Assembly (NCBI GenBank): GCA_052426225.1
Contig: JBNJNM010000008.1
Span: 620,001-684,000, forward strand
Direction: 5' to 3'
Source of the DNA: Zancudomyces culisetae HAW-14-8
Lineage: Eukaryota > Fungi > Kickxellomycota
DNA length: 64,000 nt
In this document: positions 15,444 to 39,469 of the stretch, piece after piece
Layout: each line of letters begins with the position of its first letter
How positions within the stretch are numbered: position 1 is the first letter of the stretch
Translations under genes and position numbers: made by a program
The notes under the pieces: model-generated
Database searches by the model: none
Told to the model about the DNA's origin: nothing
What the model saw: only the letters and a program-made list of their open reading frames with translations

Positions 15444-18400
15444 CTAGGGACAATCCTGCTTGTATAGTGTGTACATGGTTAGAGACGAAAGCAGCCTTTC
15501 TGGATGGGATTCTCTAGGTGTTTGCCATAAGCTTGATTTTTCGCCGATTTTGTCGAGATAAAATTTCGATCTAAATTGGCAGTTAAGCCACTCTTGCTTC
15601 GCAGCCAATTTTTGTAAAGAATTCGAAGGGGAGGGGGGAGGTGTTATAATTGTATAACACGAATCACTCAAGTTTACCCACTCCGATATTTTTTTATCAA
15701 GACTAATTTATTGTAAGGAAAACTATAAAAAAAAACCTACAAGCTGTAAAATCCTACTCATTTTTGAGCAGCTGCTCTCTAAGGCAAAAAGGTTTGCTGA
15801 GCAACTCCACGGTGAGCTTGTGTATATATACAACCAGGAGGACAAGTACACAAAGTATAAATACCATCAGGAAAAATTGTGGTTGGTAAAACGTCAACAT
15901 CCAAGTTCTTTTTGTAAAATAAAATTCTACTCCCGAAAATGGGGTTCCGTAACTGAAAATAAAGTTGAAAGCCAACCATGTAATAAGTGCAAACCCAAAT
16001 CCAAACAGAGTGAAAAGGGTTATGGATCTTGAATCCAAAAACGAAGCTTTAAAGTTGAGAGTAAACAGAACAATGCCCAAGAGATAGAAGTTTAGCGAGA
16101 AAAGATCGGGAGATGTTGCATTCGTGGAAAAAATTGACGAAAAAGAAAAAACACCGAACGAGCAAAGTACCGAATGAACTATTCCGAGATAAATAACTTC
16201 CCGAATAAAGACAGGGATACTCAGCAGGTAATTGTTTGGTCCTATGAATCTGTAATAGTGTGGATTCTTGAGTAAAGTTTTGGCTGGCAGATCTTGGTCA
16301 AAAATTCCGAGGAATAGAATGGGTAGCAATGTAAATATGGTATTATAAAAGGCGAGTGTGGTGGGCTCAAACACTGATGTTCCGCTAAACATTACATATG
16401 CCTGGTATATTGCTTGGCACAGACTATAAACCAGACACTTATAAAATGTAGCGATGGTGAAGCGAGAAATTCTGGAATAGTTCCACAATCCATGTACAAA
16501 CAATAATTTGCGCAAAAATCTAAACTGTGAGATCGAAAAATCGGCACTTCTCGCTGCTTGAAGCCCTTCAACACCAGATATTCCAATCCCAACATGTGCT
16601 TCTTGGATCATAGCAATGTCGTTTCCACCATCTCCAATTGCCAGAGTTGCTGCATAAGACTTGACTTTGTCGCACCTTTGTCTCATAAATTTTGCAATCA
16701 ACGCCTTCTGCGATGGTGATACACGCGAACATACCACTGTATCGGAATTAATTCCAATTTCAATAAATCGATCCATAAGGTCCTGATCCTTTTCAAGAGT
16801 GGAAAGAGTATCACCATCTATAACCATTGCAAAATGTTCATATTTCTCGTTGCTTTTTTTCTTTGTATTGGTAAAGGATAAGTTCGAGTTAAAAGCGCTG
16901 TTATTGTACATTTCAGACGCCATAAGACGCGAATTTAAAACTGCACTGTCAATGTTCTCCTCATTTTGTCTGCTAGAGTGTCTTTTGTTCGCTACTGGAA
17001 TATTCTCTGTTCCAGCATAGCTGTTTCTGGAACTTATTATCCTGCTATTTCTCGAAAGTGATCGTAGTTGGTTTAGTAACAGTTTGTAGAAGTTGGCGCT
17101 AGCACTAAATATTCTTGGCCACCTAAGATTTAGGTTGTTCTGCAAAAATTCTCGCTCGTTATATGGTCTCAACACCGACACAAAGCTTTCTGCCTCATCA
17201 AGTTTCCTAGAAAGTGTTTCGGCATCCTTGATTCCCTCCAACACAAGTGTTTTGCATATTGTTTCGTCTCCGTCAATCAACCGACATGATTTTGCTATGT
17301 TTATTGCTGTCTCTACCTTGTCCCCTGTCAACATCCAAATCCTAATTCCTGCTAACCGTAAGTTGTAGATTGTTTCTGGCACTCCCTCTTGTAGCTTGTC
17401 TTCTACTGCTGTAACTCCTGTCAATTCCATTTCCTGTTCCAGTTCATTTGCCACTGCATCTATCTGCTGTTGTCTGTTTTTCAATGATGTAGATGCTTCC
17501 AAAAACCGTTTTGCCCACGATTCATAATCTTCTTCTTCTATTTCTCGATGTGCATATACCAATGTTCGCAACCCCTCACATGAAAATGCCTTCAAACTCG
17601 AATCAACACACTTATATATCCACTTTGTCTCCTCTGTCCCCGTGTGTCTATCATTGTACCCCTTCAATCTTGGCAATATCACCATATCCGCTCCTTTACA
17701 AAACAATCTAATTTTACCATCTGGACACCTATAAACTACCGACATCCGTTTCCTATTACTAGAAAACTCTACAACTGCAAGTACACTGTACATTTCTATC
17801 ACATCCTCATTGGCGTCAAGTGGACATACAAAATTCAGATTTGGCTGTGGATTATTCAACTGTTCCTTCAGTATCTCGACTGGCAGGTTCGCCTGTTCTT
17901 CATTCTGTTTTATCACAGTTTCTTTCCACTTGGATACTCGCTCAACAGGAACTATTCGAATCTTGACTTCAGGCCCAATTCGTTCGTGAAAAATATACCC
18001 CAATTCGGCAGCCGAATATACGAGAGCCTTTTCATCAGGAGAAGTGCTTTGATATCCAACAACCGAGCGTGATTCCGAGTCGATATCAGGCTGAACAGTA
18101 TGGCATAGAGCCATTGATCGAATAAACAGAGATGATTGAACACTCAGCTTTTTAGTGGATTTGATATTCGCTGTTTTTATCAAAAGATCAATGTTTTCAA
18201 CATCTCCTTGTGATATTAGCCTAAGTAGATTTGTGGGTGGAAGCCTGGTGAGTTCACTACTAACTGTACTGAACTCCCCACTAACTTTGTCGTTTTCAAC
18301 CGAGCAATTTTCAGAATCTCCCACTACCGAATCATCATCAATCTCGTTTTTTTTGTGCTTTTTGTACAACTTTTTTGGTTTGGCACCAGAACTTGCTCTG

Positions 18401-20733: not shown

Positions 20734-22398
20734 TATATATATTTTTTTCAATCTCCTATTTTCAAGTAAAATATATTTCTTCAGAATTATATCAAATATA
20801 AAAAAAAACCACCGCTTATTTGTAAATAAACGCTACACATAGAAGTACAGCTCTATCTTTGCACACACTTCTTTGGGTATACTTTTGGTTGTCTTACTGG
20901 TTATTTCTTGTATACTATGTGAAAATCATGGTATGGTATGTATTTGGGACTCACCTTGTTTATACAAGCTGCTTTAATATACTAGTTATTCTCTGATACA
21001 TCTACAGGATGTCAAGACTGTGTTTCTGATAGGTATTTACATACGATTACTACTATCTAATTTTTATTCGTACGTATCTGTGTATTTGTATATCTGTGTT
21101 TTTATTTATATCGCTAGTTGATATTTCTCGCTTTTTTTTCGCTCTTTTTCGTGATAACTGATGTATTGTGAGTAACTATATTCTTTTTACACCAATATAC
21201 ACTATTCTGTTTTTTATATGTTACTGATTCTTTTATATCTATACTTATTAGACTTTTTTGGTTGCACAAAGAATAAATCAAGTATTGGTTTAGAATTATA
21301 ACTACTCTCGCTTATTATTCCGTGATGTATTTGTTGCGGGCACTTTTATTAAATAAAGAAAGATATTAAACTGATATCATTAATGATGGCGACAGTAACA
21401 ACCTATACCTTTACTTTACTAGATGTTTAAAGTAACACATATTATAATTGAAAGTTAAACGTATGCTAATAGCGTTTATTTTCAATAATAGAAAATATTA
21501 AGGATGATATTTTAATATTTTTATTGTTTTTAACTTTATACCAACATGCTAATAAAGAAAAGGAAAAATAATAATAATAATAAAGAACAAAAGAGGTGGT
21601 GTGAGATGAAATGGGGAGAAAAAAGAAGGGAAGAAGGATGAAGGTGAGTTTAGGCGAAAACATAAAAAATAAAAAATAAAAATCAAGATTGCAGGCAAGT
21701 TCTCAGTAAAATGGACATTATACGAGTGGGTCTTTTAGTTTAGTTTTTTTTGATTGTAAGGTATATGGTTTTTATTCTGTGGTATTTGTTTTTGTTTTCT
21801 GCTTTTTGTTTTTTTTTCTTTACAACTGCTTGAAGTTAGGTATTGTTTAAAAAACAGAAAGGAATAATAGTTGGAGACATTTTGTATAACCAGAGGCAAA
21901 GTGATATTATTAGTAGCAGGCAATTTCAATTGAATTCAATTTGCCAAATAATATTAACAATTATTAGTTAATAAACTGAACTAATAATTTGAATATTTGA
22001 GTTATCATTACCACTAATATTATATTACTTTTTGTTTTTTTTTACTTGTGGCGTTTTATTCTAGAGTTTTAAGTTTAGCTTGAGAAGTTTGATTTATTAG
22101 ATTGAGGGTACTCTGTATCATTTTAGCTATGACTACTCTTTTCCACTAGTAAAAAATATAATGGACAAAGTGTAACTGAGAATTGGTACAGAAATTAAAT
22201 GCAATATAGGAGTGGGGAAAGGTTTAAAACAATTTTAAAAACATCAAAACCATGGACCCCAAAAACAATAACTTATCTTAGTTAACGATCCCTTGAAAAA
22301 AAACATGAAAAAAAAAGTACGTGTATGTTTTCAAGATGGGGGTTAAAAAGGAAATAGATGACAAGAATGGTAGAAAAGCGATACACTGGGTAATTGGT

Positions 22399-22439
22399 AT
22401 ACACATACATACAGATACAATACACATACACTATTACAC

Positions 22440-22472
<33 letters not shown>

Positions 22473-22686
22473 AAACACAAATTCGCACATGTATCGTATG
22501 AGCAAACACACACGCATACATATGTATATTCAGTATTTTTCTCTCACAACAAGTACCAGTATTGGTTTATTGTCTATACACAAGATTATAATTAAAAGGA
22601 AAAAAGAACAAAACAAAATAAAAAGGTACATTAAAAAAAATAGAAACGTTCCATGTTAATTTTTACATTTTTTCACAAGTAATATA

Positions 22687-22717
<31 letters not shown>

Positions 22718-22724
22718 CAAAACA
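22399..22724. repeat. Microsatellites: (ACACAT/ACAT)n at ~22399-22470 and (AAAAC)n at ~22690-22724
   Basis: Seen directly; they generate the spurious CV- and YT-repeat ORFs. Confidence 0.85.
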
Positions 22725-24062
22725 ACGCTAATTGTAAAATAATAAAGGGAATAGCAAAGTAAATGTGAGAGTGTGAGAGGGTTACAAGATGGAAAAAAGA
22801 AAAGGTGAGAAAGATTGGTGGGTGAGTGAATAAGTGAGTAAGAGATTGGGGGAGAAGAGAAAGAGAAAGAGAAAGATGAAAAGGAAGGGGTGTGGTTTGA
22901 ACAATTACCCACAATCATCGTACTACAAATAAAAAACGACCATTGTATTATACTGTATTATATTTTTAATTATTCGATAGTACAGGAAGGGCCTCCCCTC
23001 CCTCCCTCTGTCTCTCTCTCCATGTTCTTTACAAAGTGGTTGTTGTACCACAAAAGTTTTTATTTTGCTTTCTATTATTTGTTTGGGTTTATTATTACTC
23101 TTACTATTATTTTTTCCTTGATGTTTTTTTTTCTCTATCTATAATACATTCCCTAGTATAACAAACATTCATATACAAATGGATAGATAGATAGATGGAG
23201 ATGAAGAGATGAAGAGATGAATTATGAATTGAAGAGCGGAGGACAGGTAGGGGAAGCGAAGAAGGAGCGAATGTTTAGAGCGGGTGCGTGATTATTAAAA
23301 TCACTACAAAAAAAGTATATTTTATTCGATATTACATTTATAATTACAAACATTCAAACTTTTAGACAATAACGAGAATCCAGTTCTTGCTACCTTTCTG
23401 TGGATATAGTATGTATTTGTCCCAAAAAAAAAAGGAAACTAAATCAAATAAAATTCACAAACAAAAGTGAAAAAGAAAAAGAAAACGAAAAAGAAAAAGA
23501 AAAAAAAGGTGAGAAGAGCTGATGTGTGAATATATTTATTAAATGTTATTATACACACTATCCCTTCCTTGCTCATCCTAGTTCTTTACTTCCTCTTCCC
23601 CCCTCCCCCCCTCTCTCTTTCTCTCCTGTTCTGTTCATCTTCCACAATTCTAACTAATCAATCTTTGCACTTAATGTGTTTTATCATCTCACTTTTCCCA
23701 TATGGTAAATATTGGGCCTGTAACTACAAAAATGACATATCTGGTGGAGCCAGGGGGGAGGAGAGGTGAGGAGAGGTGAGGTGAGGTGAGGTGAGAGTTG
23801 AAATCATCAAATTAATCTGAAATGGTAAAATAAATCATGACACCTTTAATACAAATAAATCCAAACCATAAAACTCCTATTCGACTCTATCATCAATATC
23901 AGCTCTTAAGCTCCCTTAGTAATAAATCTTGATCACATTTATTCTGTTTTTCACGAAAAACGAAAAAAAATAAAATATGTATTAATAATTTATAATGGTA
24001 TAATTAAATAATAAAATGATTCTAATTCCAAAAAAAAAAATAGATAAAAAAATATCCATTAA

Positions 24063-27000
24063 CTACTTGGATTGAGGAACTGTACTGTCATCATCAGTTT
24101 TGGTTGTAATATCAGGAACTGTACCAACATTGGTACCAGTAGTACCATCACCATCACCACCGCTCATTGCATTTATTTTGCCACTATTATTACCCAATGT
24201 TGTAGTTATTGTCGTGTTTTTTGCACTTTTTGTGGAGGCATTGTTAGAATCTTTCATCTGATCCTCGAGTAATTCACTATGCACAATATTTTCACCACCA
24301 GTACCAGCACCAGGACTAGTAATGTTCATTTCTTGTAACATTTGCAATGCCCGTTTCGATATACTAGTTCGGTGCAAACTCTTTCTATAAGTTGAGTGTC
24401 GAATTGAAGAAATTTCACGACGTTTTGGTCGTAGCCGTTCAATAGGAATATTTGAATTTGTTGGTTGGTTTTGGTTTTGGTTCAAGAATAACGAGGTTAT
24501 ACTACTCGAACTTGTATTACTAACACCAGCACCGGGGCTAGTACTAGCACTAGCAGCAATTCTATTGGCAGCACCAGTTCTCAATGAATTCAACAAATCA
24601 TCAATCGCACCCTTTTCGTGTGATTTACTTTGCTTTGCTGCACTAGCTTCTCTAGAATTAATACTGGCGTTGGAATTAAGCGATTTGTTCGACTTTTCAT
24701 TTCTCAACTCACGCTCCCGCTTACGAGCCTCCAAAGCAGCTTCGATCTGTTTACGTCGTTTCTCCGCAACCAGTTTTCGGTTCTTTTCAAATGCATTCTC
24801 CTTGATTGCACGCTCAAAGCTAACACAAAACGACTTGAATATTGCAAAGAACTCATCGGCTGGCATTCCCTGAGGATCCTCACCAAACAGCCGAGCAACA
24901 ATGGTATATGACTCATCCATTTCAGTCATAGCAGAATCCAAAATGTTCAGCTGGATGGTGGCACGCTGCACAAATTCGGAGATTTTGGGAATAAAGGCAT
25001 CGCCTTCAACTTGGTTATCTAAAATATAAGTATCAAGTTCGGATTTGGCATTATCAAGATTATTCTGTAGCTCGGAAAGCTCGGTCTTGAGTTCAGGGTA
25101 GGAAACACGACAGGCCGCATCGAGAGGTTTCAAGTCTTCCAAAAACTGTAAAGCATCAGGAAAGGCCTCCTCTACTACCAGAGCTACAAAATGCAAAAGA
25201 GTTGTTTTGTTATCAGTAGCCTTTGTATCAAGCAGCCTAGACAACGACGAGATTTTGAAACCAAAGGCACCACCCCTAAAGCCAGCACCGTTCATGTAAT
25301 TTCCAATAGTCAGGATAACACCCATCAGCACAGGAATATGTGGTGATTTAGTGACGGCATTTGAAGCCTTAGAAACAGAAGAAATATCATCTTTCAGCTC
25401 GGAATACTTTTCACGCCAAGTCAAGCGAGTCAACATGACAGAAAGTCTAGAATCGTAGCGGTAAACCTGCATCATTTCATATAAAAATTGATCAGCACGA
25501 GCCATAAGGACATTATTCTTGGCCTGGTTGGTAAGAAGAGACCTTTCCTCAGAAGTTGGAAGATATATAAGGAATTGCTTGATGGTGTTTTCGCCAATAA
25601 TGCTGTCATCGAGTTGCAACAAGGCAGTCTTGATCTCCTCGAAAGTATATTTCCGCAACCGACCCAACATAATATTGATGTTGTTTGCACGTTTGGGATC
25701 CAGAATGGAAACAGCTTCAGCGGCACCCTTGTCGTCAACACCCTCGCCACCAGCCTGTTGTTGCTGGGCAAGAGCTTTCTCTCGGCGTTTCTTCTCACGT
25801 AAAGCGTTAAGATCAACAGCTTCTTTGGCAGCAAACATGGTTTCAACCTTGTCAAAGATGCCGGCTGTGCTAAGTTTGTCTTCAATGGTCTGGTCGACGT
25901 TAGTTTCAGCAGAATAGTTTTGAATCCAGAAGGATTGCACCAAAGTAGCTTGATCCGAAACCTTTTCCCATTGCACAGCCTTCAACTTTTTTCTAGGAAT
26001 AAACCGCAACTCCTTTCGAGGAAGTGGAGCAAAGACAGTGCTGTTTGATAAACCTGGGCCACTCTTATCACCGCCAACACCAGAGAACCCAATTCCTTGA
26101 AGTAAGGAGGCAATTTGGGAATTGGTGTTGTATCCAAATGAAGATGCACCGTCAGCTGAGTTGGGCGAGTCCAATTTTCCTAAAACCTGTCTGAATTGCG
26201 ATGCAAGAGGGGATGACCCACCTGAAGATGGTGGTGGTGGCGGAGGTGGAGGAGGAGGAGGACCCCCAGTTGATAGCGGAGGGGGTGGCGGAGGTGGAGG
26301 TGGTGGTGGTGGAGGCGGCGGCGGTGGTGGCGGTGGTGGTGGAGGTGGTGGTGGTGGGGGTGGTGGAGATGGTGGGGATGGTTGTGGTGGGGGAGGAGGA
26401 GGAGACAAGGCGGATGGAGGAGTTTGATCTTGAGTGGCAGAAATAGGTGTAGGGGTAAGAGAAGGAGAAGAGGAAGAATCGGAAGGTTCTTTGTTGCCGG
26501 GTAATGGTTCAGGCAGAGATTTCTGATCAACAGCGGACGGCTTGGGTTGAGAAGAAAAGGGTGCTTGAGTAGAGGAATCAGAAGAAGCGGGAATAGATTC
26601 AGGCCCAGGAACCGATCCAGACCCAGGAACAGGAACAGAAGTAGGAACTGACGCCGAATCAGGTGTTTCGTCTTCATCTTGGTAAAAGTCAGGGCTATCC
26701 AAAGCCTTTTTCAAGCCAATAGGACTACGTTTTGGGCGAGGACGGTCGCGAGTCTTAATAGAGTTGGAGAGATTAGAAGACTTTGAAACAGAAGAATATG
26801 GATTGGCGTCAACAGTAGTATCCATAGACGAAAAGTCCGAACCACCAGGATTGGTGGCATAGTTATCCGATCCCATTCCCCCTGGTACACCTCGGTCTCC
26901 AAACAACACTCGTTCAATTTTGTTGCGTGCAAATGATTCTGATACCATTCGGTCTACTGATCCTCCTTGTCCTTGAAGTCGCTTGACTTCCATTGCTAAC

Positions 27001-29240
27001 TTCTCCGCATTCAGCTGCATACTCAACCGCGGCTCTTCCGTCTCTGTGCCTGACGTCGATGTAGATTTCGATTTCAATGACGGATCACCATTTCCAGGTT
27101 CTTTCTTGACAACATCCCAAACAGCTTGCGACCGCAGCGCTGCATTCTCATACAGCAACATATTGCGCTGGTGTGTAACTGTGTCGGCATCATTGGCAAC
27201 TGACTCCACCGTCTGCAATATGTTTTTCAGCTGCGATTCTTGTTTCAACAGCTTTTCAGTAAATTGACTTCTCATCTCCTTAATCTGCGTGTTTAACCCA
27301 TCTATCGTATGTCTGCTCACCCGCAATAAGTCCTCCAGCACCAACACCTTGCTTTTCAAACTGCCTACCAGCCCTCCTGACTGGTTTGCCACTTCTTGCT
27401 CCAACTCGTTTATTATCTTGGTTGTCTTTTCCAGCTTTTCTCGCAGATCCAACGACTCTCTAATCACCTCTTCTAAACTCTCGTCATTCGAAAACTTATC
27501 AATCATATACCCCACTTTGTTCGACCCAGCTCCAGGTGACTGGCCATTACTCCCGACCAGTTGTGGCTGAAGATCGTGTTCCAACACTTGGTCAATCAGC
27601 TTGTCTATTATCTGAAGCTTCTTTACCACATCTGCCCTATCGTCCTCAACATATTTACTTTTCCCTCCTCCCAATGACACCTCCGCCCTCGCATCATTCA
27701 ATACCAGCAAGTGCTGTACCACCGAAAACAAATAGTCTCCAACCTGATCGTCACTGCTGAACACTGCTCTCAACCTGCCCAAAACATCTTCAACATCCTC
27801 TTCTACTGCCTCTTCATCTCTGCTTGCCGTCTCAAGAAGCTCCGTATAATCTTGTTCCATTTCTCTCACATACTTGTCTATCTGCAGATCTATCAACGCA
27901 CTGTTAAACTGCCTTAGCTTCTTCACCACGTTTTCTAACCCCGCTGAACTCAGCTGTGTCCGATATTCTGTTCTTATCTCCGCATACTCACACACTGAGA
28001 TTATCGAATTCACCAAAATCATACTTGCTAGCCCAAAATCTATAATTTCCCTATCCGGCGCTCCCGCATTAACATCTTTGCTCCTACCTGCCCCTGCCGT
28101 ACCCTGCCCCACATTCAACAAATCTATTGCCTCCTCCATTGACGCCACCCACACATCAAATATCGATCCTCCATACTTCTTCTCCTCTTCCCTCACCTCT
28201 TGCAACCTCTCTATTCCCTTCAATACTTGCTCATGCCCAAACTGTGGCTCACTATAGCAAATAAACGTCAACTGTTCCGAAACCAGCTTTCGTGTCTGCA
28301 ACGACTGTGAATCCAGCGACAAACATAACGATTCTATACATTCTGGAACCCTCAACGCCTCCTGTGCCCCCCATTCTATATTCATTATTGTCTTTATACA
28401 TCTAACTATCTCGAGTTCGCGTCCATTTTCATCACTATTTCTTCTTCGCTCTCCCCCATTTATTTGCTTAAGCTGCCGCGCCAAATACACTAACCCATCC
28501 CGGTCTACAAACTCTCGCACCCAGTTTATATGCTGCGTCCCCAAACATACCCGCAAATGTACCAGCATTTTTATCTCAATTCCAGTAATATCCGCCTCCT
28601 TCTCCTTAAACATCCTACAAAATGCTGCCGGTGTTGATTTCACCAGTCTGTTTTCTTGATATTTTGACTGCGAATGCAACAGCTGGATCTTGTTGTCTAT
28701 CGACATTGACCTCATCTGTGCCCTCTGTGTCTCTTTAATATTCATCTCCTCCATCATCTCCTCCAGCTTCGTATTAACCTCATTAGTTCGCCGATCATCA
28801 GCAAGCAAAAACGTTTTCAGCCTCTTTGCCGTATCTCCATCCCCTCCACTCTGTCGCTGTACATGTATACTGCCTTTTTCTGAAATACCACTACTGACCC
28901 GCGACGTAATCTGCTCCCTCGATGAGGTTGGACTCGTCGAATTCCATCTGGACGCACTCAAATTGCTAAACAACGAAGCTGTGCTTGCCCCTGAACCTCG
29001 GTACTCATGCCTGTTATCCCCACTACTACCTTTCTTTGTCGATCCAGCTTTCCCCCCAGATGTTATCGCGCTGGTACGTGATAGCACCCGTGGATCGATC
29101 GATATAGGAACAAACTGCATCTTGCCTGAATCCAGCTTGTAATTGTTTTCCTCTGGGTCAATTTCGGAGTATGGCTCCGAAATGCTCCGGATTGTGCTGG
29201 CATTTTTCTCTTTGTTCTTCGACTTTCTGAGAAAAGACAT
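24063..29240 (-). CDS. Formin B (Diaphanous-related SepA/Bni1-like), intronless, 1725 aa
   Basis: GBD/FH3 region, long poly-Pro FH1 (~26230-26405), FH2 lasso KLKAVQWEKV..FW, IGNYMNGAGFRGGAFGF, and DAD motif GAIDDLLNSL. Confidence 0.95.
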   Translation of the reverse strand: MSFLRKSKNKEKNASTIRSISEPYSEIDPEENNYKLDSGKMQFVPISIDPRVLSRTSAITSGGKAGSTKKGSSGDNRHEYRGSGASTASLFSNLSASRWNSTSPTSSREQITSRVSSGISEKGSIHVQRQSGGDGDTAKRLKTFLLADDRRTNEVNTKLEEMMEEMNIKETQRAQMRSMSIDNKIQLLHSQSKYQENRLVKSTPAAFCRMFKEKEADITGIEIKMLVHLRVCLGTQHINWVREFVDRDGLVYLARQLKQINGGERRRNSDENGRELEIVRCIKTIMNIEWGAQEALRVPECIESLCLSLDSQSLQTRKLVSEQLTFICYSEPQFGHEQVLKGIERLQEVREEEKKYGGSIFDVWVASMEEAIDLLNVGQGTAGAGRSKDVNAGAPDREIIDFGLASMILVNSIISVCEYAEIRTEYRTQLSSAGLENVVKKLRQFNSALIDLQIDKYVREMEQDYTELLETASRDEEAVEEDVEDVLGRLRAVFSSDDQVGDYLFSVVQHLLVLNDARAEVSLGGGKSKYVEDDRADVVKKLQIIDKLIDQVLEHDLQPQLVGSNGQSPGAGSNKVGYMIDKFSNDESLEEVIRESLDLREKLEKTTKIINELEQEVANQSGGLVGSLKSKVLVLEDLLRVSRHTIDGLNTQIKEMRSQFTEKLLKQESQLKNILQTVESVANDADTVTHQRNMLLYENAALRSQAVWDVVKKEPGNGDPSLKSKSTSTSGTETEEPRLSMQLNAEKLAMEVKRLQGQGGSVDRMVSESFARNKIERVLFGDRGVPGGMGSDNYATNPGGSDFSSMDTTVDANPYSSVSKSSNLSNSIKTRDRPRPKRSPIGLKKALDSPDFYQDEDETPDSASVPTSVPVPGSGSVPGPESIPASSDSSTQAPFSSQPKPSAVDQKSLPEPLPGNKEPSDSSSSPSLTPTPISATQDQTPPSALSPPPPPPQPSPPSPPPPPPPPPPPPPPPPPPPPPPPPPPPPPPLSTGGPPPPPPPPPPPSSGGSSPLASQFRQVLGKLDSPNSADGASSFGYNTNSQIASLLQGIGFSGVGGDKSGPGLSNSTVFAPLPRKELRFIPRKKLKAVQWEKVSDQATLVQSFWIQNYSAETNVDQTIEDKLSTAGIFDKVETMFAAKEAVDLNALREKKRREKALAQQQQAGGEGVDDKGAAEAVSILDPKRANNINIMLGRLRKYTFEEIKTALLQLDDSIIGENTIKQFLIYLPTSEERSLLTNQAKNNVLMARADQFLYEMMQVYRYDSRLSVMLTRLTWREKYSELKDDISSVSKASNAVTKSPHIPVLMGVILTIGNYMNGAGFRGGAFGFKISSLSRLLDTKATDNKTTLLHFVALVVEEAFPDALQFLEDLKPLDAACRVSYPELKTELSELQNNLDNAKSELDTYILDNQVEGDAFIPKISEFVQRATIQLNILDSAMTEMDESYTIVARLFGEDPQGMPADEFFAIFKSFCVSFERAIKENAFEKNRKLVAEKRRKQIEAALEARKRERELRNEKSNKSLNSNASINSREASAAKQSKSHEKGAIDDLLNSLRTGAANRIAASASTSPGAGVSNTSSSSITSLFLNQNQNQPTNSNIPIERLRPKRREISSIRHSTYRKSLHRTSISKRALQMLQEMNITSPGAGTGGENIVHSELLEDQMKDSNNASTKSAKNTTITTTLGNNSGKINAMSGGDGDGTTGTNVGTVPDITTKTDDDSTVPQSK

Positions 29241-32200: not shown

Positions 32201-34056
32201 ACACTTTCAGCTTGAAATATTATATATAGAGCCTACAGCTGTAGAAGTATACCTGGCGAATGGATACCAAAGTGCTCAAACGATGAATTGGAATGAAATT
32301 AATGACTCTTTTATTACTGTAAAAAAACACAAGAGTTGTTGGAGGGTTAAAGAGTCCGAAAGATCGTTGTGTTTGAGGAGACGGCATGTATATGAAATAA
32401 TGTAGTTTTAATTTCCTTCTCTAAATAAAGTATAAGCAGATAATAGCTTCATCTGTTTGTTTGTTGGACAATGAGGAGCGTAATGTGTAATATGTAAAAG
32501 GAAAAGGAGAAGGGAAAAAAGAAAAAAATTATGATTCGTCTCCAAAGTTATGTAACTGAGCTAGACCAATGATCTAATTAGTGTCCAATTTTTATTATAT
32601 ACATAAGGTAAAAATGACCGTTTCAACTGGCTTGAAGGGTGTAAATATATTTTCTGTAAACCAAAGCATAGGCTTTCAAGCGCTATGAAGTGATATGGTT
32701 AATCAATCTCACTCGGTTCCTAATTTTGGAGGCTCAATAAAAGCGAGAATAAAATAAATAAAATGTCCCGAAAGCACAAGAGATTGGCTTTTAAAAGAAA
32801 CTTGCAAACCAAAATTTTTGATTGTTTTTGGAAGAATAAATTTGCATATACTTGTTGCCTAATTATTTATTGTGGATTTAAACAAAGAGAAAAACGTTAC
32901 AAAACTTTGCCAATTAGATAATAAATGATTCAAAAAAATTAATGGCTTGAAATACATCAGCTAAAACTAGAGTATTTATAGCTTTTTAAAATGGTCTGGT
33001 TTTAATCAGCTTACACAGGCTTTTGACTATTGTCACCAGTTGAAAAAAATATTTAAAAAAATACCCAAAAGGTGCGGAGGGAGAGGATGGTGGGAACCAG
33101 TAAAAAAACTTCAACGGTTTTGGACCTCCAGGACTATTTGCGAGTAAAAAAGATAACCAAAATGTTACAAATTTGATCTTTTTGGGTCAACTCAGAAGCT
33201 AGTAGATTTAGTAAATAAAAAAATAAACATTTCTTCTAAAATAAATTAAATATATTAAAACAGGAATTCGGTTTTCAATAAATAAAAAAACTATAACTTT
33301 AGAAATAACACCTCAATGCTATTTCTAACCAGAAGGATATATATACTATCAATTTACGCAAATCAGTGACATATTTATGAGAGTAATTGTTGCTATTTGC
33401 CAAAACGATTCAAGTGTTTTCTGAAGAATTTAGATCATACATTGGGAGAGTTTAAGAGTCTAGAAAAAAGGTAGGTAAAACAAAATTTACAACACTGGTC
33501 TGTGCTTAGAAATCAACACCACTCTGAATATGAATGTATAAAAAAGGGACAAAAAGTAGAGAATGGAAAACGTGATCTTAAGTGTTCTGAGGATTGTGAC
33601 ATTTCTCTGGTACCATTAATCCGAAGCAGATAACATAAGTTATTACAGCTATTTATTTCTGCCGAGGAGTTTATGCTTTTTTTCAGAAGAATCACAATTC
33701 AATAAACCTTGAGACTTTTTGATCAGTAATTTTTGGTTGATTGCATTTAAATGAATGTTATTCACATCTATCCCCATTTTGAGCCATTACAATTTTATAA
33801 AGTATACTAACAGTTACCAAACATATAAAATATCTAGATATTTAGAATTTACGCATATCACATTTGGAAGGGGTCAAAATTGCTTAGTTCTTCAAAGTCA
33901 TTATTGATCACTGAATAAGCATTAACAAATAAAAAAGACAAAGGCAGCGCTCTTGAATAACGCCTATAAATTAACTCTAGTGCCTTAGCATAACGATCAA
34001 GACAGAATACCACTGTACAATATAAATTTCGTCCTAACAGCGCTGTTATTTAACTA

Positions 34057-37000
34057 ATGGATACCGAGAAAAAAATGGAAAAAAACAAAAATAGAAAGTC
34101 TCGTGAGCTTGGAGAGGAGTCGGAGGAGGAACTTGATGAAGACATCTATCTCGAAGATGGGCAAAATCTAGGACAGATAAGCAAACTGAGACATTATGGA
34201 GCAATACGAACCAAGGTGACTAGGATATCGAGAGCAATAGAAACATACCATGCGAAAAAATCAAAAACAGAAGTCTCGAGCCCTGTGACCAGCGGAAGAC
34301 CAATGCTAGCCAAACATCAGGGTGTGGAACAGGATCAAAGTGCTGAAACGGAACATTCCGAAGTCTACGTCAGAATGGCTCAACCAGAGAGAAAATCTGA
34401 GCAGGCCCCAGAAGGCGCTAGAGAAAGGATGCTTAATCTACTCGAAGAGCTAGAGTCAAGTGGAGATGGCAAGCAAAAGGTAATAAAAGAACACCAAGAA
34501 ATAAACAAACAGCCGGCCTTGGCAACCGATCATGAAGGGGTCAACCCCATCTTGGAAAGTGGGGAAGTGATGTCGCGAGCGGTTCCGCTTCCGGGGTATT
34601 TCTTGCTAGATGATTCTGACTATTGGACTGGTGGGTATGTGTTTCAGCTTCGAGGAAAAAATCCAAAGATGTCAATAAGAGTCCCAGGATCTCTAACTAA
34701 ACGGGTCCATTACGAAGTATCTTATGACCATCCAAAAAACAACATTTCAACAGCCAGGTATAATGCGTTTACATTCTTACCGGCTCAGCTAGTTGCACAG
34801 TTTTCAAAAGTGGCAAATATATACTTCTTGTTCATTTCAATATTGCAGCAAGTTCCTGAATGGAGCACTACAGGAAAAGCAACCACTTTGTTTCCATTGA
34901 TGTTTTTCATAACTCTTAGTATTCTACACGAAGGTTATGATGATTTTAGGAGACATAAAATGGATAGAGCCGAAAATACACAGGAAGCCAAAGTTTTGAA
35001 AATCAAAGTACTAAAGTCAAAGGAAAAACAGCATAAATTCATACATGTTCTGCAGGCAAGGGCAGCAAAATTGAGTATTGCTGAAGGGCCAAGAGGTGTG
35101 GTAAAGATGGTAAGGGCTATGAGGAACCTCTTGTGCTTTTCTTCAGTAAGAAGTAAAATCCAAGAAAGAGTTGAAAACAATAGAAGAAAAAAACGAGAAA
35201 CCGAGGAATCTGATGAAGAGGATGAAGGTGAGATTGAGGGCAGGGCGCTCACAGAAAGGAAGAAAGCACCGCCACGGCGTTCTGGCGATAGGCATGTAGG
35301 TTTTATCTTGGAGGATGAAGAAATGTTAAGGAGGAGAAGTACATATAGAGGTAGCGTGCATGTACCCACATCCATGGATATCGAATCAAGAGAAATAGAA
35401 CCAATTAATAGGCGTTCATCACTGGGCGTCTATGAGATCGATAGAAGAGAAAAAAGACAGGGCGAACGAGGTGAGATGAGCCGATCAAGCTTTTCTCTTC
35501 CTACCGACATGATGTATAAGTGGAAGAGTAAGAAGTGGCAAAACTTACAGGTTGGAGACTTGCTGTTAATCGAGGAGAACGAATGGATTCCGGCAGACTG
35601 TGTGCTATTAGCGAGTGATGATAGTGAGGGGGTGTGTTTTATTGAAACTTCATCGCTAGATGGAGAAACTACGCTCAAACAAAAGCAGGCATTACAAATT
35701 ACTGCAAAAAACATTAAAAATACGGATCAGTTGGCGGCATTTCCTGGAATCACGTATACGGAACCACCAGATCCAGATCTGTATTCGTTTGAAGGTTATT
35801 TAGAAGTTGAGGGTATTAAACATGCGCTTACTTCTAACCAGCTGTTGTTGAGAGGGTCAAAGCTACGCAATACCAAGTATGCGTTGGTGCAGGTAATCTA
35901 TTCAGGAGAAGAGACCAAGCTGAGGCTCAATGCTTCAAAAAACATCAGAACAAAGGCTTCACAGCTACAAAGGGTTACCAATAAGATTATTATTGTCGTG
36001 TTTATGGTTTTAATTGCTGCATGTATCGTCTTGACAGTAACCGGTACAGTTACACAGAGAAAGTATGATGATTTGGTCTGGTATTTATACAACTATAAAG
36101 TACCTAATGCTGCCATGTTTTTTGGGTATGTAGTAATGCTTAATACATTGATTCCCATATCATTATATGTAACACTTGAGGGCGTTAAGGTTGCACAGGC
36201 CTTTTTGATGCAAAATGATATTCAGATGTATTATGAAAAGACAGATACCCCGATGGTTGCAAGAACTTCTGCATTGAACGAAGATTTAGGCATGGTGAAA
36301 TATATTTTATCTGATAAAACAGGAACACTGACAGAAAATATAATGAGGTTCAGAGCAGCAATGGTAGCGGGTCTGGCATTTTACCACCAAGATCTTTTAA
36401 CTGTAAAAGAGTCAAATGTTTCAGAAATAAAAACAGTAGAGGAATCAATTTTGAAGAATTATGCCAGTGGGGACCAGAAAAAACGTCGAGACACCACCGC
36501 TACCAAGGACGGGGGTATGGATGTTGGTTGGGGTACTGCTACTGTGAGCAGAGCTTCTAACCAAACAGATAAGGAAATATTCAGAGTTTCAGCAATTGGC
36601 GAGGAAGAGCTTAATACAAGCGGTAAGGACGCTTACCCGGCATATGAAGCCGATATTACGCAATTACCACCAACCACCTTTCTAAGAATGTTATCAGAAA
36701 ACAAAAACTTTTTTGAGGCCCAGCCCCAGTATGTAACAAATGGCCTTCGACTTTCGAGTAACTCTGATGTTCAATCATCTCTGTTTATTCGATCAATGGC
36801 TCTATGTCATACTGTTCAGCCTGATATCGACTCGGAATCACGCTCGGTTGTTGGATATCAAAGCACTTCTCCTGATGAAAAGGCTCTCGTATATTCGGCT
36901 GCCGAATTGGGATACATTCTTCACGAACGAATTGGGCCTGAAGTCAAGATTCGAATAGTTCCTGTTGAGCGAGTATCCAAGTGGAAAGAAACTGTGATAA

Positions 37001-39222
37001 AACAGAATGAAGAACAGGCGAACCTGCCAGTCGAGATACTGAAGGAACAGTTGAATAATCCACAGCCAAATCTGAATTTTGTATGTCCACTTGATGCCAA
37101 TGAGGATGTGATAGAAATGTACAGTGTACTTGCAGTTGTAGAGTTTTCTAGTAATAGGAAACGGATGTCGGTAGTTTATAGGTGTCCAGATGGTAAAATT
37201 AGATTGTTTTGTAAAGGAGCGGATATGGTGATATTGCCAAGATTGAAGGGGTACAATGATAGACACACGGGGACAGAGGAGACAAAGTGGATATACAAGT
37301 GTGTTGATTCGAGTTTGAAGGCATTTTCATGTGAGGGGTTGCGAACATTGGTATATGCACATCGAGAAATAGAAGAAGAAGATTATGAATCGTGGGCAAA
37401 ACGGTTTTTAGAAGCATCTACATCATTGAAAAACAGACAACAGCAGATAGATGCAGTGGCAAATGAACTGGAACAGGAAATGGAATTGACAGGAGTTACA
37501 GCAGTAGAAGACAAGCTACAAGAGGGAGTGCCAGAAACAATCTACAACTTACGGTTAGCAGGAATTAGGATTTGGATGTTGACAGGGGACAAGGTAGAGA
37601 CAGCGATAAACATAGCAAAATCATGTCGGTTGATTGACGGAGACGAAACAATATGCAAAACACTTGTGTTGGAGGGAATCAAGGATGCCGAAACACTTTC
37701 TAGGAAACTTGATGAGGCAGAAAGCTTTGTGTCGGTGTTGAGACCATACAAAGAGCGTGTCAAGTACAAAATTTTCAGTCGCATCAGATGGCCCAAACTT
37801 TTTAAATCCAGTACTTTTTTTTATAGATCACTTAAACAGCGCTTAAACATGTTCGGCTCTAAAAAAGAGAAGAATGGTAAGAGTCGGAAAAGACTGAGTT
37901 CTGAGGTCAGGAACAGCCACAGCAACTATACATTGTCAACATCCAACAACTCATTGATTAACGACTCTGTAGCTGGGCTAGCAGTGATGTCGGACCAAAC
38001 ACAGTCTAGTCACAGTATTTTCCACAATAATGGAAAAGACTCATTTTTGAACAGTACTTTAGGTAACTCTAGTACAAATGCTATCAAGATGACAACTGAT
38101 ACTGTTCCACCTCATCAACACAAGTACCAAAACTTTGCCATGGTGGTTGATGGCGAGACGCTACTAACACTAGAGAAAGCCCCCGAATTATTGAAACGAT
38201 TTATTGAAACTGGTATTAACTCTGACACCGTTATATGTTCACGAGTATCACCATCTCAAAAAGCACTGATTGCCAGATATATGCGAATAAGATGTAATAC
38301 CATCCGATCCCACCCAGTCACGTTGGCTGTAGGCGATGGTGGAAATGATATTTCAATGATTCAGGAAGCACATGTGGGTGTTGGGATTGCGGGTGTGGAA
38401 GGACTTCAAGCAGCAAGGAGTGCTGATTTTTCGATTGCGCAGTTTAGATTTTTACGAAAACTGCTTTTGGTACACGGACTTTGGAACTATTCAAGAGTTG
38501 CTCGGTTTACAAGTGCTACTTTCTACAAATGCTACACGTTTTATATGTGCCAGTTTGTCTTTCAGTTCTTCAACTTTATTAGTGGTACGTCTGTTTTTGA
38601 ACCCACTGCGCTGTCTTTGTACAACACATTCTTCACTCTTTTTCCAGTAATTATTCTTGGTTGTTTGGATCAAGATTTACCCGCCAACGTCTTGTATAAT
38701 TCACCAGAATACTATGCAATGGTTGGACCTAAAAATAGCCTGCTTAGCTTGAAAACCTTTTTCAAGGATTTCTTGATTCTTGGGACAATACATTTTTTGG
38801 TGAGTACATTCAGCGTATTCTTTCCTCCACTCATTTCTGGAAGGTATGCGACCAGTGTCGATCTATATGCGCTGAGTACGATATTGTACACAATCTGTGT
38901 GATTTCCATCAATTTCAAAATCGCATATTTCGACACCAAACTGAGAACGATATATACCCACCTGTCGTATATACTGTCAGTCTTGCTGTGGATTGGTTTT
39001 TGTGTGGTCCTATCCACCATACCTATCCCAATTGTTTCTAAACAGTATACAGCAAAGAATTCTTACACAAAGCACTTTGTCCAGGGTCATTTCTGGGCTC
39101 AGATAATGATCACCTCAATTTTCGCTCTATTGATGGTTTACATACTATACAAATACATGGAGAATAGAAATCCAACTGAGCGCTTTAGACTGCAATTGTT
39201 TCAAAAGCATGTCAGTAAATAG
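34057..39222 (+). CDS. P4-ATPase phospholipid flippase B (Dnf3 subfamily); possible extra terminal exon to 39302
   Basis: 1721-aa ORF with DGET, NTLIPISLYVTLE, SDKTGTLT, KGAD, TGDK, GDGGND and QFRFLRKLLLVHG. Confidence 0.94.
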   Translation: MDTEKKMEKNKNRKSRELGEESEEELDEDIYLEDGQNLGQISKLRHYGAIRTKVTRISRAIETYHAKKSKTEVSSPVTSGRPMLAKHQGVEQDQSAETEHSEVYVRMAQPERKSEQAPEGARERMLNLLEELESSGDGKQKVIKEHQEINKQPALATDHEGVNPILESGEVMSRAVPLPGYFLLDDSDYWTGGYVFQLRGKNPKMSIRVPGSLTKRVHYEVSYDHPKNNISTARYNAFTFLPAQLVAQFSKVANIYFLFISILQQVPEWSTTGKATTLFPLMFFITLSILHEGYDDFRRHKMDRAENTQEAKVLKIKVLKSKEKQHKFIHVLQARAAKLSIAEGPRGVVKMVRAMRNLLCFSSVRSKIQERVENNRRKKRETEESDEEDEGEIEGRALTERKKAPPRRSGDRHVGFILEDEEMLRRRSTYRGSVHVPTSMDIESREIEPINRRSSLGVYEIDRREKRQGERGEMSRSSFSLPTDMMYKWKSKKWQNLQVGDLLLIEENEWIPADCVLLASDDSEGVCFIETSSLDGETTLKQKQALQITAKNIKNTDQLAAFPGITYTEPPDPDLYSFEGYLEVEGIKHALTSNQLLLRGSKLRNTKYALVQVIYSGEETKLRLNASKNIRTKASQLQRVTNKIIIVVFMVLIAACIVLTVTGTVTQRKYDDLVWYLYNYKVPNAAMFFGYVVMLNTLIPISLYVTLEGVKVAQAFLMQNDIQMYYEKTDTPMVARTSALNEDLGMVKYILSDKTGTLTENIMRFRAAMVAGLAFYHQDLLTVKESNVSEIKTVEESILKNYASGDQKKRRDTTATKDGGMDVGWGTATVSRASNQTDKEIFRVSAIGEEELNTSGKDAYPAYEADITQLPPTTFLRMLSENKNFFEAQPQYVTNGLRLSSNSDVQSSLFIRSMALCHTVQPDIDSESRSVVGYQSTSPDEKALVYSAAELGYILHERIGPEVKIRIVPVERVSKWKETVIKQNEEQANLPVEILKEQLNNPQPNLNFVCPLDANEDVIEMYSVLAVVEFSSNRKRMSVVYRCPDGKIRLFCKGADMVILPRLKGYNDRHTGTEETKWIYKCVDSSLKAFSCEGLRTLVYAHREIEEEDYESWAKRFLEASTSLKNRQQQIDAVANELEQEMELTGVTAVEDKLQEGVPETIYNLRLAGIRIWMLTGDKVETAINIAKSCRLIDGDETICKTLVLEGIKDAETLSRKLDEAESFVSVLRPYKERVKYKIFSRIRWPKLFKSSTFFYRSLKQRLNMFGSKKEKNGKSRKRLSSEVRNSHSNYTLSTSNNSLINDSVAGLAVMSDQTQSSHSIFHNNGKDSFLNSTLGNSSTNAIKMTTDTVPPHQHKYQNFAMVVDGETLLTLEKAPELLKRFIETGINSDTVICSRVSPSQKALIARYMRIRCNTIRSHPVTLAVGDGGNDISMIQEAHVGVGIAGVEGLQAARSADFSIAQFRFLRKLLLVHGLWNYSRVARFTSATFYKCYTFYMCQFVFQFFNFISGTSVFEPTALSLYNTFFTLFPVIILGCLDQDLPANVLYNSPEYYAMVGPKNSLLSLKTFFKDFLILGTIHFLVSTFSVFFPPLISGRYATSVDLYALSTILYTICVISINFKIAYFDTKLRTIYTHLSYILSVLLWIGFCVVLSTIPIPIVSKQYTAKNSYTKHFVQGHFWAQIMITSIFALLMVYILYKYMENRNPTERFRLQLFQKHVSK
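36768..37748 (+). repeat. Right arm of the 981-bp inverted repeat (inside flippase B)
   Basis: Reverse complement of 17162-18142 with 8 mismatches (7 synonymous, 1 Phe/Leu). Confidence 0.95.
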
Positions 39223-39394: not shown

Positions 39395-39469
39395 CCCTCA
39401 TCCTAGTCCCTCATCCTAGTCCCTCATCCTAGTCCCTACCCTTACCCCTACCCTTACCCCTACCCTTAA
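39395..39469. repeat. Compound C-rich minisatellite (CCCTCATCCTAGT)x3 + (CCCTACCCTTAC)x3, telomere-like
   Basis: Seen directly; the last unit ends in CCCTTAA. Confidence 0.85.

What the first reader, a model, noticed from the sequence alone, without database searches (positions are those of the whole stretch)
17162..37748. Near-identical 981-bp inverted repeat inside two diverged flippases: gene-conversion tract and candidate 18.6-kb flip-flop switch
Seen: 17162-18142 (-) and 36768-37748 (+) align without indels, with 8 mismatches (7 silent) and abrupt borders (VQSSLFIRS...SVLRPY). The tract includes a variable loop (IVPVERVSKWKETVIKQNEEQ...) that selection alone would not keep identical at silent sites, and the genes differ at many silent and non-silent sites elsewhere. 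It spans the N domain and part of the P domain. Inference: recent ectopic gene conversion. Because the genes point away from each other, a crossover in the tract would invert 18143-36767 and keep both reading frames intact. That would exchange the promoter + TM1-4 halves against the TM5-10 + tail halves, giving two new chimeric flippases, and would flip formin B. The geometry resembles the inverted-repeat flip-flop MAT inversion of Ogataea/Komagataella, but here the repeat lies within coding sequence.
Basis: partly seen in the sequence, partly recalled or inferred. Interest (0 to 1): 0.85.

Follow-up and report, generated by a model that had tools for sequence, protein, structure and literature searches.

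The report
Homogenised inverted tract swaps flippase halves
Two old, very different lipid-flippase genes of the mosquito-gut fungus Zancudomyces culisetae share a nearly identical 981-bp stretch in opposite orientation, kept alike by gene conversion, and a second isolate's assembly appears to carry the 18.6-kb segment between them flipped, which would give two hybrid flippases.

Summary
Arms 17162-18142 (-) and 36768-37748 (+) differ at 8 of 981 sites. The rest of the two P4-ATPase genes is saturated at silent sites (dS 0.045 in the tract, 1.7 or more outside).

The window is the PacBio HiFi assembly of Z. culisetae HAW-14-8. Ectopic gene conversion is very well supported:
- The homogenised tract also appears in an independent Illumina assembly of isolate COL-18-3.
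- Allele patterns suggest repeated, patchy conversion.
- A second, unrelated inverted flippase pair on contig C11 carries a 1,784-bp tract with 3 mismatches, ending at the same structural position. This scan had already noted that tract on other DNA (s1-676226).

New here: the COL-18-3 assembly holds both junctions predicted for the inverted state, A5'-arm-B3' and B5'-arm-A3'. Both hybrid frames are open as far as they are assembled. It also holds one B5'-arm-B3' contig, and no A5'-arm-A3' contig was found.

I read this as an inversion polymorphism by homologous recombination in the tract (about 0.6), which would swap halves of two diverged flippases. Misjoins by the Ray assembler remain the main rival (about 0.3). 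A regulated flip-flop switch has no support. No sequencing run was listed, so nothing was tested at read level. The closest known case is the S. cerevisiae chromosome XIV flip/flop region.

The parts
15754..20733 (-). Flippase A (P4-ATPase, 1659 aa from the first ATG)
   Evidence: Single long ORF. Pfam PhoLip_ATPase_N, E1-E2_ATPase, Cation_ATPase, Hydrolase and PhoLip_ATPase_C. Long branch in the tree.
17162..18142 (-). Arm A of the inverted repeat: the homogenised tract covering the N domain and the TGDK part of the P domain (A residues about 871-1197)
34057..39222 (+). Flippase B (P4-ATPase, 1721 aa)
   Evidence: 99.7% identical to the COL-18-3 protein P0165.
36768..37748 (+). Arm B of the inverted repeat
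18143..36767 (.). 18,625-bp segment between the arms. It holds the A 5' half, a 3.3-kb gene-free spacer, formin B, a 4.8-kb gene-free spacer and the B 5' half. In the COL-18-3 contigs it appears joined the other way round.
   Evidence: L008 joins window 26606-37757 to 18147->6370. L011 joins 26281->17153 to 36764-37897.
24063..29240 (-). Formin B (GBD, FH3, FH1, FH2), a passenger gene of the segment. Its FH1 repeat at about 26220-26610 is where all three COL-18-3 contigs end.
15754..17161 (-). A 3' half: hypervariable P-domain loop, GDGGND motif, TM5-10 and tail. In COL-18-3 it is found only behind B 5'.
37749..39222 (+). B 3' half. In COL-18-3 it is found behind B 5' (L010), and its first 140 bp also behind A 5' (L011).
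36687..36688 (+). Two-base patch 80 nt outside the tract. COL-18-3 contig L010 carries the A-type bases GC on a B background.

Best explanation
Flippases A and B are old paralogues that arose in the Zancudomyces lineage and lie head to head. Their central catalytic block is bounded on both sides by hypervariable, poorly alignable loops. It comprises the nucleotide-binding domain plus the TGDK part of the phosphorylation domain. I infer that non-allelic homologous recombination without crossover (interlocus gene conversion) homogenises this block repeatedly. Conversion would spread until homology runs out at the loops, which would explain the abrupt borders. It would also explain why an unrelated inverted flippase pair (C/D on contig C11) has a tract ending at the same structural position. 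The resulting 981-bp near-identical inverted repeat is then a substrate for the crossover outcome of the same reaction. That crossover inverts the 18.6-kb segment and rejoins the halves in frame. It yields B5'-A3' and A5'-B3' hybrids: promoter, N-tail, TM1-4, A domain and DKTGT of one gene joined to the late P domain, TM5-10 and tail of the other. HAW-14-8 carries one orientation. COL-18-3 carries the other, at least in part of its DNA. Shown: the tract, its homogenisation at silent sites, its presence in two isolates, the second pair, and the junction contigs with open hybrid frames (one complete, one open as far as it is assembled). Inferred: that the junction contigs reflect real molecules, that the process is unregulated homologous recombination, and that the hybrids function. 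Sub-confidences: gene conversion about 0.95; a real orientation difference between isolates about 0.6.
For: Conversion:
- dS is 0.045 in the tract against 1.7 or saturated in the conserved flanks.
- The shuffle test excludes chance.
- A and B are sisters (98/95 support) outside five Smittium orthologues in the 5' block, so the duplication is old but lineage-specific.
- The tract is near-identical in independent Illumina contigs of COL-18-3 too.
- The COL-specific alleles G269 and T272 are present on all COL arms and on neither HAW arm. Sites 529 and 643 show all four allele combinations. An A-type GC patch lies 80 nt outside the tract in L010. Together these indicate repeated, patchy conversion.
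- The C/D pair has an 1,852-bp inverted repeat whose 1,784-bp core has 3 mismatches. Its 3' border falls at the homologous column, about 45-55 residues after TGDK-ETAINI.

Inversion:
- Contig LSSK01001401.1 (L008) is collinear with window 26606-37757 and then with 18147->6370. Its B5'-arm-A3' ORF of 1699 aa is open.
- Contig LSSK01000781.1 (L011) is collinear with 26281->17153 and then runs 140 nt into the B 3' flank. Its frame is open to the contig end.
- The A 3' flank gene is on one COL contig only, the recombinant one. No A5'-arm-A3' model was found.
- The COL arms differ at 8 sites. The outermost lie 67 nt from the 5' border and 123 nt from the 3' border, within reach of the 150-nt reads (PMC5026252).
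- The window's own orientation comes from 48x HiFi reads that span a 1-kb arm easily (PMC12611240).
Against: - The COL-18-3 contigs come from Ray on 2x150 reads with 500-bp inserts (PMC5026252). Pairs of that size cannot span the whole arm.
- That assembly also has LSSK01001254.1 (L009/L010) with the uninverted B5'-arm-B3' junction. At least one contig is therefore wrong, or the DNA was mixed.
- L011 reaches only 140 nt past the border.
- The allele pattern on the COL arms does not fit one simple crossover (529 is B-type and 643 A-type on the A5'-linked arm).
- Only two isolates are available.
- No sequencing run was listed, so nothing is tested at read level.
- The HAW-14-8 genome holds no alternative contig with the other orientation.
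Confidence: 0.6

Rival explanations
1. Conversion only. Both isolates have the orientation seen in the window, and the two recombinant COL-18-3 contigs are misjoins made by the Ray assembler inside the repeat.
For: The assembly is short-read, with a 500-bp insert and a greedy seed-extension assembler (PMC5026252). The assembly contradicts itself: B 5' is joined both to A 3' (L008) and to B 3' (L010), and those two contigs duplicate 11,152 bp. The flank switch falls in the last identical stretch of the arm, positions 860-981, which is where a de Bruijn walk is ambiguous. L011 stops 140 nt after the border, about one read length.
Against: It needs two independent misjoins that happen to be exactly reciprocal. 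The expected A5'-arm-A3' contig is absent, and the A 3' flank occurs only once, on the recombinant contig. The identical stretch to be bridged is 122 nt, shorter than the reads. Misjoining also does not explain why L008 and L010 differ at 6 sites in shared sequence, four of them upstream of the arm in single-copy sequence.
Confidence: 0.3
2. Active flip-flop. Both orientations coexist and interconvert within a culture, so two loci give four flippase forms. This would be a phase-variation-like or diversity-generating device, regulated or at least frequent.
For: The COL-18-3 assembly holds three of the four possible junctions at once, as a mixed population would give. The geometry and in-frame repeat make the exchange non-destructive. 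First-stage notes of this scan list many candidate invertible inverted repeats in this genome (untested).
Against: L008 and L010 differ at 4 sites upstream of the arm, three of them 3-8 kb from it. That points to two separate lineages or haplotypes rather than rapid interconversion of one molecule. The HiFi assembly gives one orientation and no alternative contig. No recombinase-like ORF lies in or beside the segment. There is no centromere- or telomere-type silencing context that would give orientation a regulatory meaning. In the closest known yeast case the orientation is stable on laboratory timescales (PMC9731477).
Confidence: 0.07
3. The near-identity of the arms is an artefact of assembly or polishing in the window's genome.
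For: None found.
Against: The assembly comes from HiFi reads with hifiasm (PMC12611240). The arms keep 8 differences, 7 of which have the B-type allele in the independent Illumina contigs of another isolate. That isolate's arms are also about 99% alike. A second pair in the genome shows the same pattern.
Confidence: 0.02

Closest known systems
S. cerevisiae chromosome XIV 24-kb flip/flop region (Salzberg et al. 2022, PMC9731477)
   Same: The inverted repeat is made of paralogous genes and is continually homogenised by gene conversion. The segment between the arms, some 20 kb, occurs in either orientation in different strains through homologous recombination. It is not a regulated switch and is stable in the laboratory.
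   Different: In yeast the 4-kb repeat holds whole, near-identical genes, so inversion changes no protein. Here the repeat is an internal 981-bp block of two genes that are otherwise saturated at silent sites, so inversion recombines gene halves and promoters. Only two isolates are known here, and the evidence is at assembly level.
Ogataea polymorpha / Komagataella phaffii flip-flop mating-type switching (PMC5720833)
   Same: A segment of about 19 kb is inverted by recombination between inverted repeats.
   Different: In those yeasts the process is induced by starvation, and orientation decides which MAT genes are silenced by the centromere or telomere. The repeats flank the genes rather than lying inside coding sequence. 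None of these properties is shown here.
Arm-to-arm gene conversion in palindromes, such as human Y-chromosome palindromes P1-P8 (PMC8600007), and the FLNA-EMD inversion polymorphism between inverted repeats (own knowledge)
   Same: Inverted duplicates stay nearly identical through intrachromosomal conversion. Crossover yields inversion rather than deletion, so it is tolerated.
   Different: Those arms are whole duplicated segments. Here only a sub-genic block is homogenised while the rest of each gene has diverged freely.
Bacterial invertible coding-sequence systems (phase-variable hsdS loci, shufflons; own knowledge)
   Same: Inverted repeats inside coding sequence let an inversion exchange protein halves and create new hybrid specificity subunits.
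   Different: Those systems are usually driven by a dedicated site-specific recombinase and switch at high frequency. No recombinase gene was found here, and the repeat is long enough for general homologous recombination.

Membership tests
Interlocus (ectopic) gene conversion tract between paralogues | Sharp step in identity inside otherwise diverged paralogues, including silent sites | tested here: met
   Nucleotide identity is 0.97-1.00 inside the tract against 0.3-0.8 outside. dS is 0.045 against 1.7 or more. Shuffle test.
Interlocus (ectopic) gene conversion tract between paralogues | The duplication is much older than the tract | tested here: met
   Flanking conserved blocks are saturated at silent sites. 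A and B have protein branch lengths of 0.63 and 0.27 after their split.
Interlocus (ectopic) gene conversion tract between paralogues | Not an assembly artefact: seen in independent data | tested here: met
   COL-18-3 Illumina contigs carry arms that differ at 8 of 981 sites and share most B-type alleles with the window.
Interlocus (ectopic) gene conversion tract between paralogues | Concerted evolution: isolate-specific alleles shared by both arms | tested here: inconclusive
   G269 and T272 are on all COL arms and on no HAW arm, and sites 529/643 show four allele combinations. The phasing of short-read contigs inside the arm is not certain.
Inversion polymorphism by recombination between inverted repeats (S. 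cerevisiae chrXIV flip/flop type) | Both orientations found among isolates, with both reciprocal junctions | tested here: inconclusive
   Both recombinant junctions are present as COL-18-3 contigs. A parental B junction contig exists too. The contigs are short-read Ray contigs and no reads were available.
Inversion polymorphism by recombination between inverted repeats (S. cerevisiae chrXIV flip/flop type) | Breakpoints lie inside the homogenised repeat | tested here: met
   In L008 and L011 the flanks change partner within the arm. The last arm-specific site is 859 and the first flank-specific site is 982.
Inversion polymorphism by recombination between inverted repeats (S. cerevisiae chrXIV flip/flop type) | Repeated re-inversion across a strain phylogeny | not testable with these tools
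   Only two isolates have assemblies within reach.
Programmed flip-flop switch (Ogataea/Komagataella MAT type) | Both orientations in one clonal culture, inducible | not testable with these tools
   No run was listed. The HAW-14-8 genome has a single orientation.
Programmed flip-flop switch (Ogataea/Komagataella MAT type) | Orientation decides expression through position next to silencing chromatin, with repeats outside the affected coding sequences | tested here: not met
   The repeat is intragenic. The window lies at 620-684 kb of contig C8, and no centromere-like feature was seen at the arms. The effect of inversion would be on protein composition.
Recombinase-driven invertible coding segments (hsdS, shufflons) | Dedicated site-specific recombinase gene at the locus | tested here: not met
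   Between and beside the arms only formin B and ORFs of 112 aa or less in the spacers occur. These small ORFs were not scanned against Pfam.
P4-ATPase (phospholipid flippase) | PhoLip_ATPase_N and _C, E1-E2 ATPase and N-domain Pfam set, with DKTGTLT, TGDK and GDGGND motifs | tested here: met
   for both genes. Motifs are visible.

The most novel reading that the evidence does not exclude
The inverted tract works as a reversible intragenic flip-flop. Both orientations would coexist in one culture, as the three junction types in the COL-18-3 assembly hint. Two loci would then encode four flippases, pairing either substrate-path half (TM1-4, own promoter) with either TM5-10/regulatory-tail half. 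The same device would operate at the second pair (C/D). Recurrent homogenisation of the catalytic core would then be maintained because it keeps the switch usable. That would be a eukaryotic counterpart of the bacterial hsdS-type shuffling of coding halves.
Probability: 0.1. Interest if true: 0.85.

Novelty: new variant of a known kind. Interest (0 to 1): 0.62.

Why it matters
If the orientation difference is real, nature has performed a reciprocal domain swap between two deeply diverged flippases, and both products have open frames. One isolate would have A5'-A3' and B5'-B3'; the other would have A5'-B3' and B5'-A3'. That gives a ready-made test of how far the membrane entry-gate half (TM1-4, with the promoter) and the TM5-10/tail half of a P4-ATPase are interchangeable. 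It would also show that conversion of a sub-genic block can turn old paralogues into an inversion substrate. This extends the yeast chromosome XIV flip/flop principle from whole-gene repeats to intragenic repeats. Two unrelated flippase pairs are homogenised over the same catalytic block up to the same loop. This suggests a general rule: conversion fills the alignable core and stops at hypervariable inserts. Deep public long-read data (844x Nanopore, 468x CLR, 48x HiFi) make the question answerable at once.

Tried and rejected
- **Read-level test:** The look-up of sequencing runs on window 15500-20500 listed no run, so read laying could not be used.
- **Window genes beside B:** exact look-ups of two of them found nothing. 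The contig was reached instead through a homologue search.
- **A 5' in COL-18-3:** the word-based search found no A 5' model. The exhaustive representative search found the 293-aa fragment P0167, which led to the reciprocal junction contig.
- **C/D pair in COL-18-3:** it could not be reached. Five exact look-ups of neighbouring ORFs failed, and no C/D-like Z. culisetae protein was among the fetched proteins.
- **Metagenomes:** a scan with a 40-nt arm pattern found nothing.
- **Ancestral 5'/3' combination:** Smittium has a single co-orthologue, so this could not be inferred from Smittium paralogues. Synteny shows flippase followed by formin in S. simulii, as with A 3' and formin A here. That does not decide orientation.
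- **A simple single crossover as the origin of the COL arms:** rejected, because the allele pattern at sites 529 and 643 is not monotonic.
- **Replacement of A 5' by a copy of B 5' in COL-18-3** (expansion into a larger palindrome): rejected, because A 5' exists there (L011).
- **tRNA and Rfam scans of the window:** empty.
Full report
**1. What is there**

The window is positions 620001-684000 of contig C8 in a 27.1-Mb, 25-contig genome. The largest contig is 5,239,357 bp. That is exactly the largest fragment of the PacBio HiFi/hifiasm assembly of Zancudomyces culisetae HAW-14-8 (ARSEF 9014) described in PMC12611240. The best protein hits are Z. culisetae and Smittium, which are Harpellales, gut fungi of mosquito larvae.

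- Two long intronless ORFs are complete P4-ATPases: 15754-20733 (-) is flippase A and 34057-39222 (+) is flippase B.
- They lie head to head, with formin B (24063-29240, -) and two gene-free AT-rich spacers between them.

**2.

- The inverted repeat is 990 nt at 99%, with arms 18,625 nt apart.
Seven are silent.
- Outside the tract the genes are 30-80% identical at nucleotide level.
- Nei-Gojobori dS is 0.045 in the tract. It is 1.7 in the conserved 5' blocks and saturated in the 3' block.
- In 2000 column shuffles the best 981-nt window still had 310 mismatches, against 8 observed.
- The tract covers the whole nucleotide-binding domain and the TGDK-ETAINI part of the P domain.
- Both borders abut hypervariable, poorly alignable loops.

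**3. It is gene conversion, it looks recurrent, and it is not unique to this pair**

In the 5' block A and B are sisters (98/95 support), outside five Smittium orthologues. The duplication is therefore specific to the Zancudomyces lineage, yet old. S. simulii has one flippase followed by one formin.

An independent Illumina assembly of another isolate shows the same homogenised tract. This is COL-18-3, GCA_001969505.1, so a polishing artefact is excluded.

Coding divergence between the isolates in these genes is 0.34-0.52%. The two arms differ by 0.82% in each isolate. The last complete homogenisation therefore seems to predate the isolates' split. Three observations point to later, patchy conversion:
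- The COL-specific alleles G269 and T272 sit on all COL arms and on no HAW arm.
- Sites 529 and 643 show all four allele combinations.
- Contig L010 has the A-type bases GC at window 36687-8, 80 nt outside the tract on a B background.

A genome search with the arm also revealed a second pair, C and D, on contig C11 (about 4,758,603-4,763,267 on the + strand and 4,771,034-4,775,854 on the - strand). This pair is tail to tail and belongs to a deeply separate P4-ATPase clade.
- C and D share an 1,852-bp inverted repeat whose 1,784-bp core has only 3 mismatches.
- Its 3' border falls at the column homologous to the A/B border, about 45-55 residues after TGDK-ETAINI, where a long low-complexity insert begins.
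- Its 5' border lies much further upstream, near the PISL motif of TM4.

The simplest reading is that conversion spreads through the alignable core and stops where homology ends. Another first-stage note of this scan had flagged that 1,784-bp tract (s1-676226).

**4. The inversion**

No sequencing run was listed for this stretch, so read-level tests were impossible. The older COL-18-3 assembly gave unexpected evidence. That assembly used Ray v2.3.1, 2x150-nt reads and 500-bp inserts (PMC5026252).

| COL-18-3 contig | Locus | Collinear with the window | Junction |
|---|---|---|---|
| LSSK01001401.1 (29,484 bp) | L008 | 26606-37757, then 18147 down to 6370 | B upstream - B5' - arm - A3' - A's downstream genes |
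| LSSK01000781.1 (9,278 bp) | L011 | 26281 down to 17153, then 140 nt into the B 3' flank (37758-37897) | formin B C-terminus - A5' - arm - B3' |
| LSSK01001254.1 (30,933 bp) | L009/L010 | 26606 to 54549 | B5' - arm - B3', as in the window |

- The annotated protein of L008, P0001, matches B over its residues 1-1225 bar two residues and matches A thereafter. The full hybrid ORF is open, at 1699 aa.
- L011 was found through the 293-aa fragment P0167. Its hybrid frame is open to the contig end.
- L008 and L011 are exactly the two reciprocal junctions predicted for the inverted state.
- No A5'-arm-A3' contig or protein model was found.
- The gene just downstream of A occurs on one COL contig only, the recombinant one.

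**5. How far this can be trusted**

The COL arms fall into two types. Alpha is linked to A 5'; beta is linked to B 5'. They differ at 8 sites (67, 229, 484, 529, 643, 812, 820, 859).

The outermost sites lie 67 nt from the 5' border and 123 nt from the 3' border, so 150-nt reads could phase them.

A uniformly parental genome would need two misjoins that happen to be reciprocal. A uniformly inverted genome would need one misjoin (L010).

L008 and L010 share 11,152 bp but differ at 6 sites. These are window 29051, 33623, 36687, 36688, and arm positions 337 and 361. L008 equals the window at all six. The COL-18-3 DNA therefore seems to contain two versions of the B 5' region.

This fits a mixed or heterozygous sample with one version in each orientation. 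It fits rapid interconversion of a single molecule poorly. I cannot exclude assembler artefacts.

My estimate is 0.6 that COL-18-3 really carries the inverted arrangement, at least in part. I give 0.3 that both recombinant contigs are misjoins, and less than 0.1 that the locus switches actively within cultures.

**6. Mechanism and consequences (inference)**

General homologous recombination between the arms gives conversion when resolved without crossover and inversion when resolved with one. Because the repeats are inverted, crossover does not delete anything, and because the arms are in register, both frames survive.

- The swap puts the promoter, N-tail, TM1-4, A domain and DKTGT of one gene together with the late P domain (GDGGND), TM5-10 and C-tail of the other.
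- It also flips formin B.
- No recombinase-like ORF and no structured RNA lies in the segment.

**7. Comparison with known systems**

The closest case is the 24-kb flip/flop region of S. cerevisiae chromosome XIV. There a 4-kb inverted repeat of paralogous genes is continually homogenised, and the region re-inverts among strains while being stable in the laboratory (PMC9731477). The difference is that here the repeat is an internal block of two otherwise very different genes, so inversion makes hybrid proteins.

Ogataea MAT switching (PMC5720833) shares the geometry. Its regulation and its silencing logic are not shown here. Bacterial hsdS-type inversions share the 'repeat inside coding sequence' idea but use dedicated recombinases (own knowledge).

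I rate this a new variant of a known kind. First-stage notes list many other candidate conversion tracts and invertible repeats in this genome (untested), so the locus may be one instance of a genome-wide habit.

**8. Limits**

- No reads were examined and only two isolates are available.
- The C/D pair could not be examined in COL-18-3.
- No functional data exist.

Noticed in passing
G000 contig C11, about 4,758,603-4,775,854 (loci L005-L007): A second inverted pair of P4-ATPases (C on the + strand, D on the - strand, tail to tail) from a different subfamily. They share an 1,852-bp inverted repeat whose 1,784-bp core has 3 mismatches. The rest of the genes is saturated at silent sites. The 3' border is homologous to that of the A/B tract.
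   Followed up: partly
L008 and L010 (COL-18-3 contigs LSSK01001401.1 and LSSK01001254.1), equivalent to window 26606-37757: Two contigs of one assembly start at the same base and duplicate 11,152 bp, but differ at 6 sites (window 29051, 33623, 36687, 36688, 37104, 37128). This suggests that the COL-18-3 DNA was not a single haploid clone at this locus.
   Followed up: partly
window 20752-24062 versus 29241-34056: The gene-free spacer upstream of flippase A is only 96.2% identical between isolates, with 16 gaps. The spacer upstream of B is 99.1% identical. The A5'-linked arms also carry most of the private changes, matching A's long branch in the tree.
   Followed up: no
window 39411-39446: The alignment of the COL-18-3 contig breaks here, with a length difference of about 35 bp between isolates. 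This sits at the telomere-like repeat just 3' of flippase B that another first-stage note flagged (s1-667886).
   Followed up: no
window 41583-42674; COL-18-3 protein P0162: The public COL-18-3 model named '30S ribosomal protein S2' (447 aa) matches this sphingolipid-synthase-like gene at 95% over only 29% of the query. It is probably a fused or mispredicted gene model in the older annotation.
   Followed up: no
L012 (Smittium simulii MBFR01000041.1): Among the best-scoring hits each Smittium species has one flippase of this group. In S. simulii it is followed 2.1 kb downstream by a formin on the same strand. This is the same order as flippase A, the 189-aa ORF and formin A in the window, which suggests an old duplication of a flippase-formin module in Zancudomyces. 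Formins A and B are only about 30% identical.
   Followed up: partly
whole genome (PMC12611240, Table 1): The HiFi assembly has 6.2% duplicated BUSCOs against 1.5-1.8% in the Illumina, hybrid and CLR assemblies of the same strain (7.8% in the Nanopore one). This could mean retained haplotigs and some heterozygosity in HAW-14-8.
   Followed up: no
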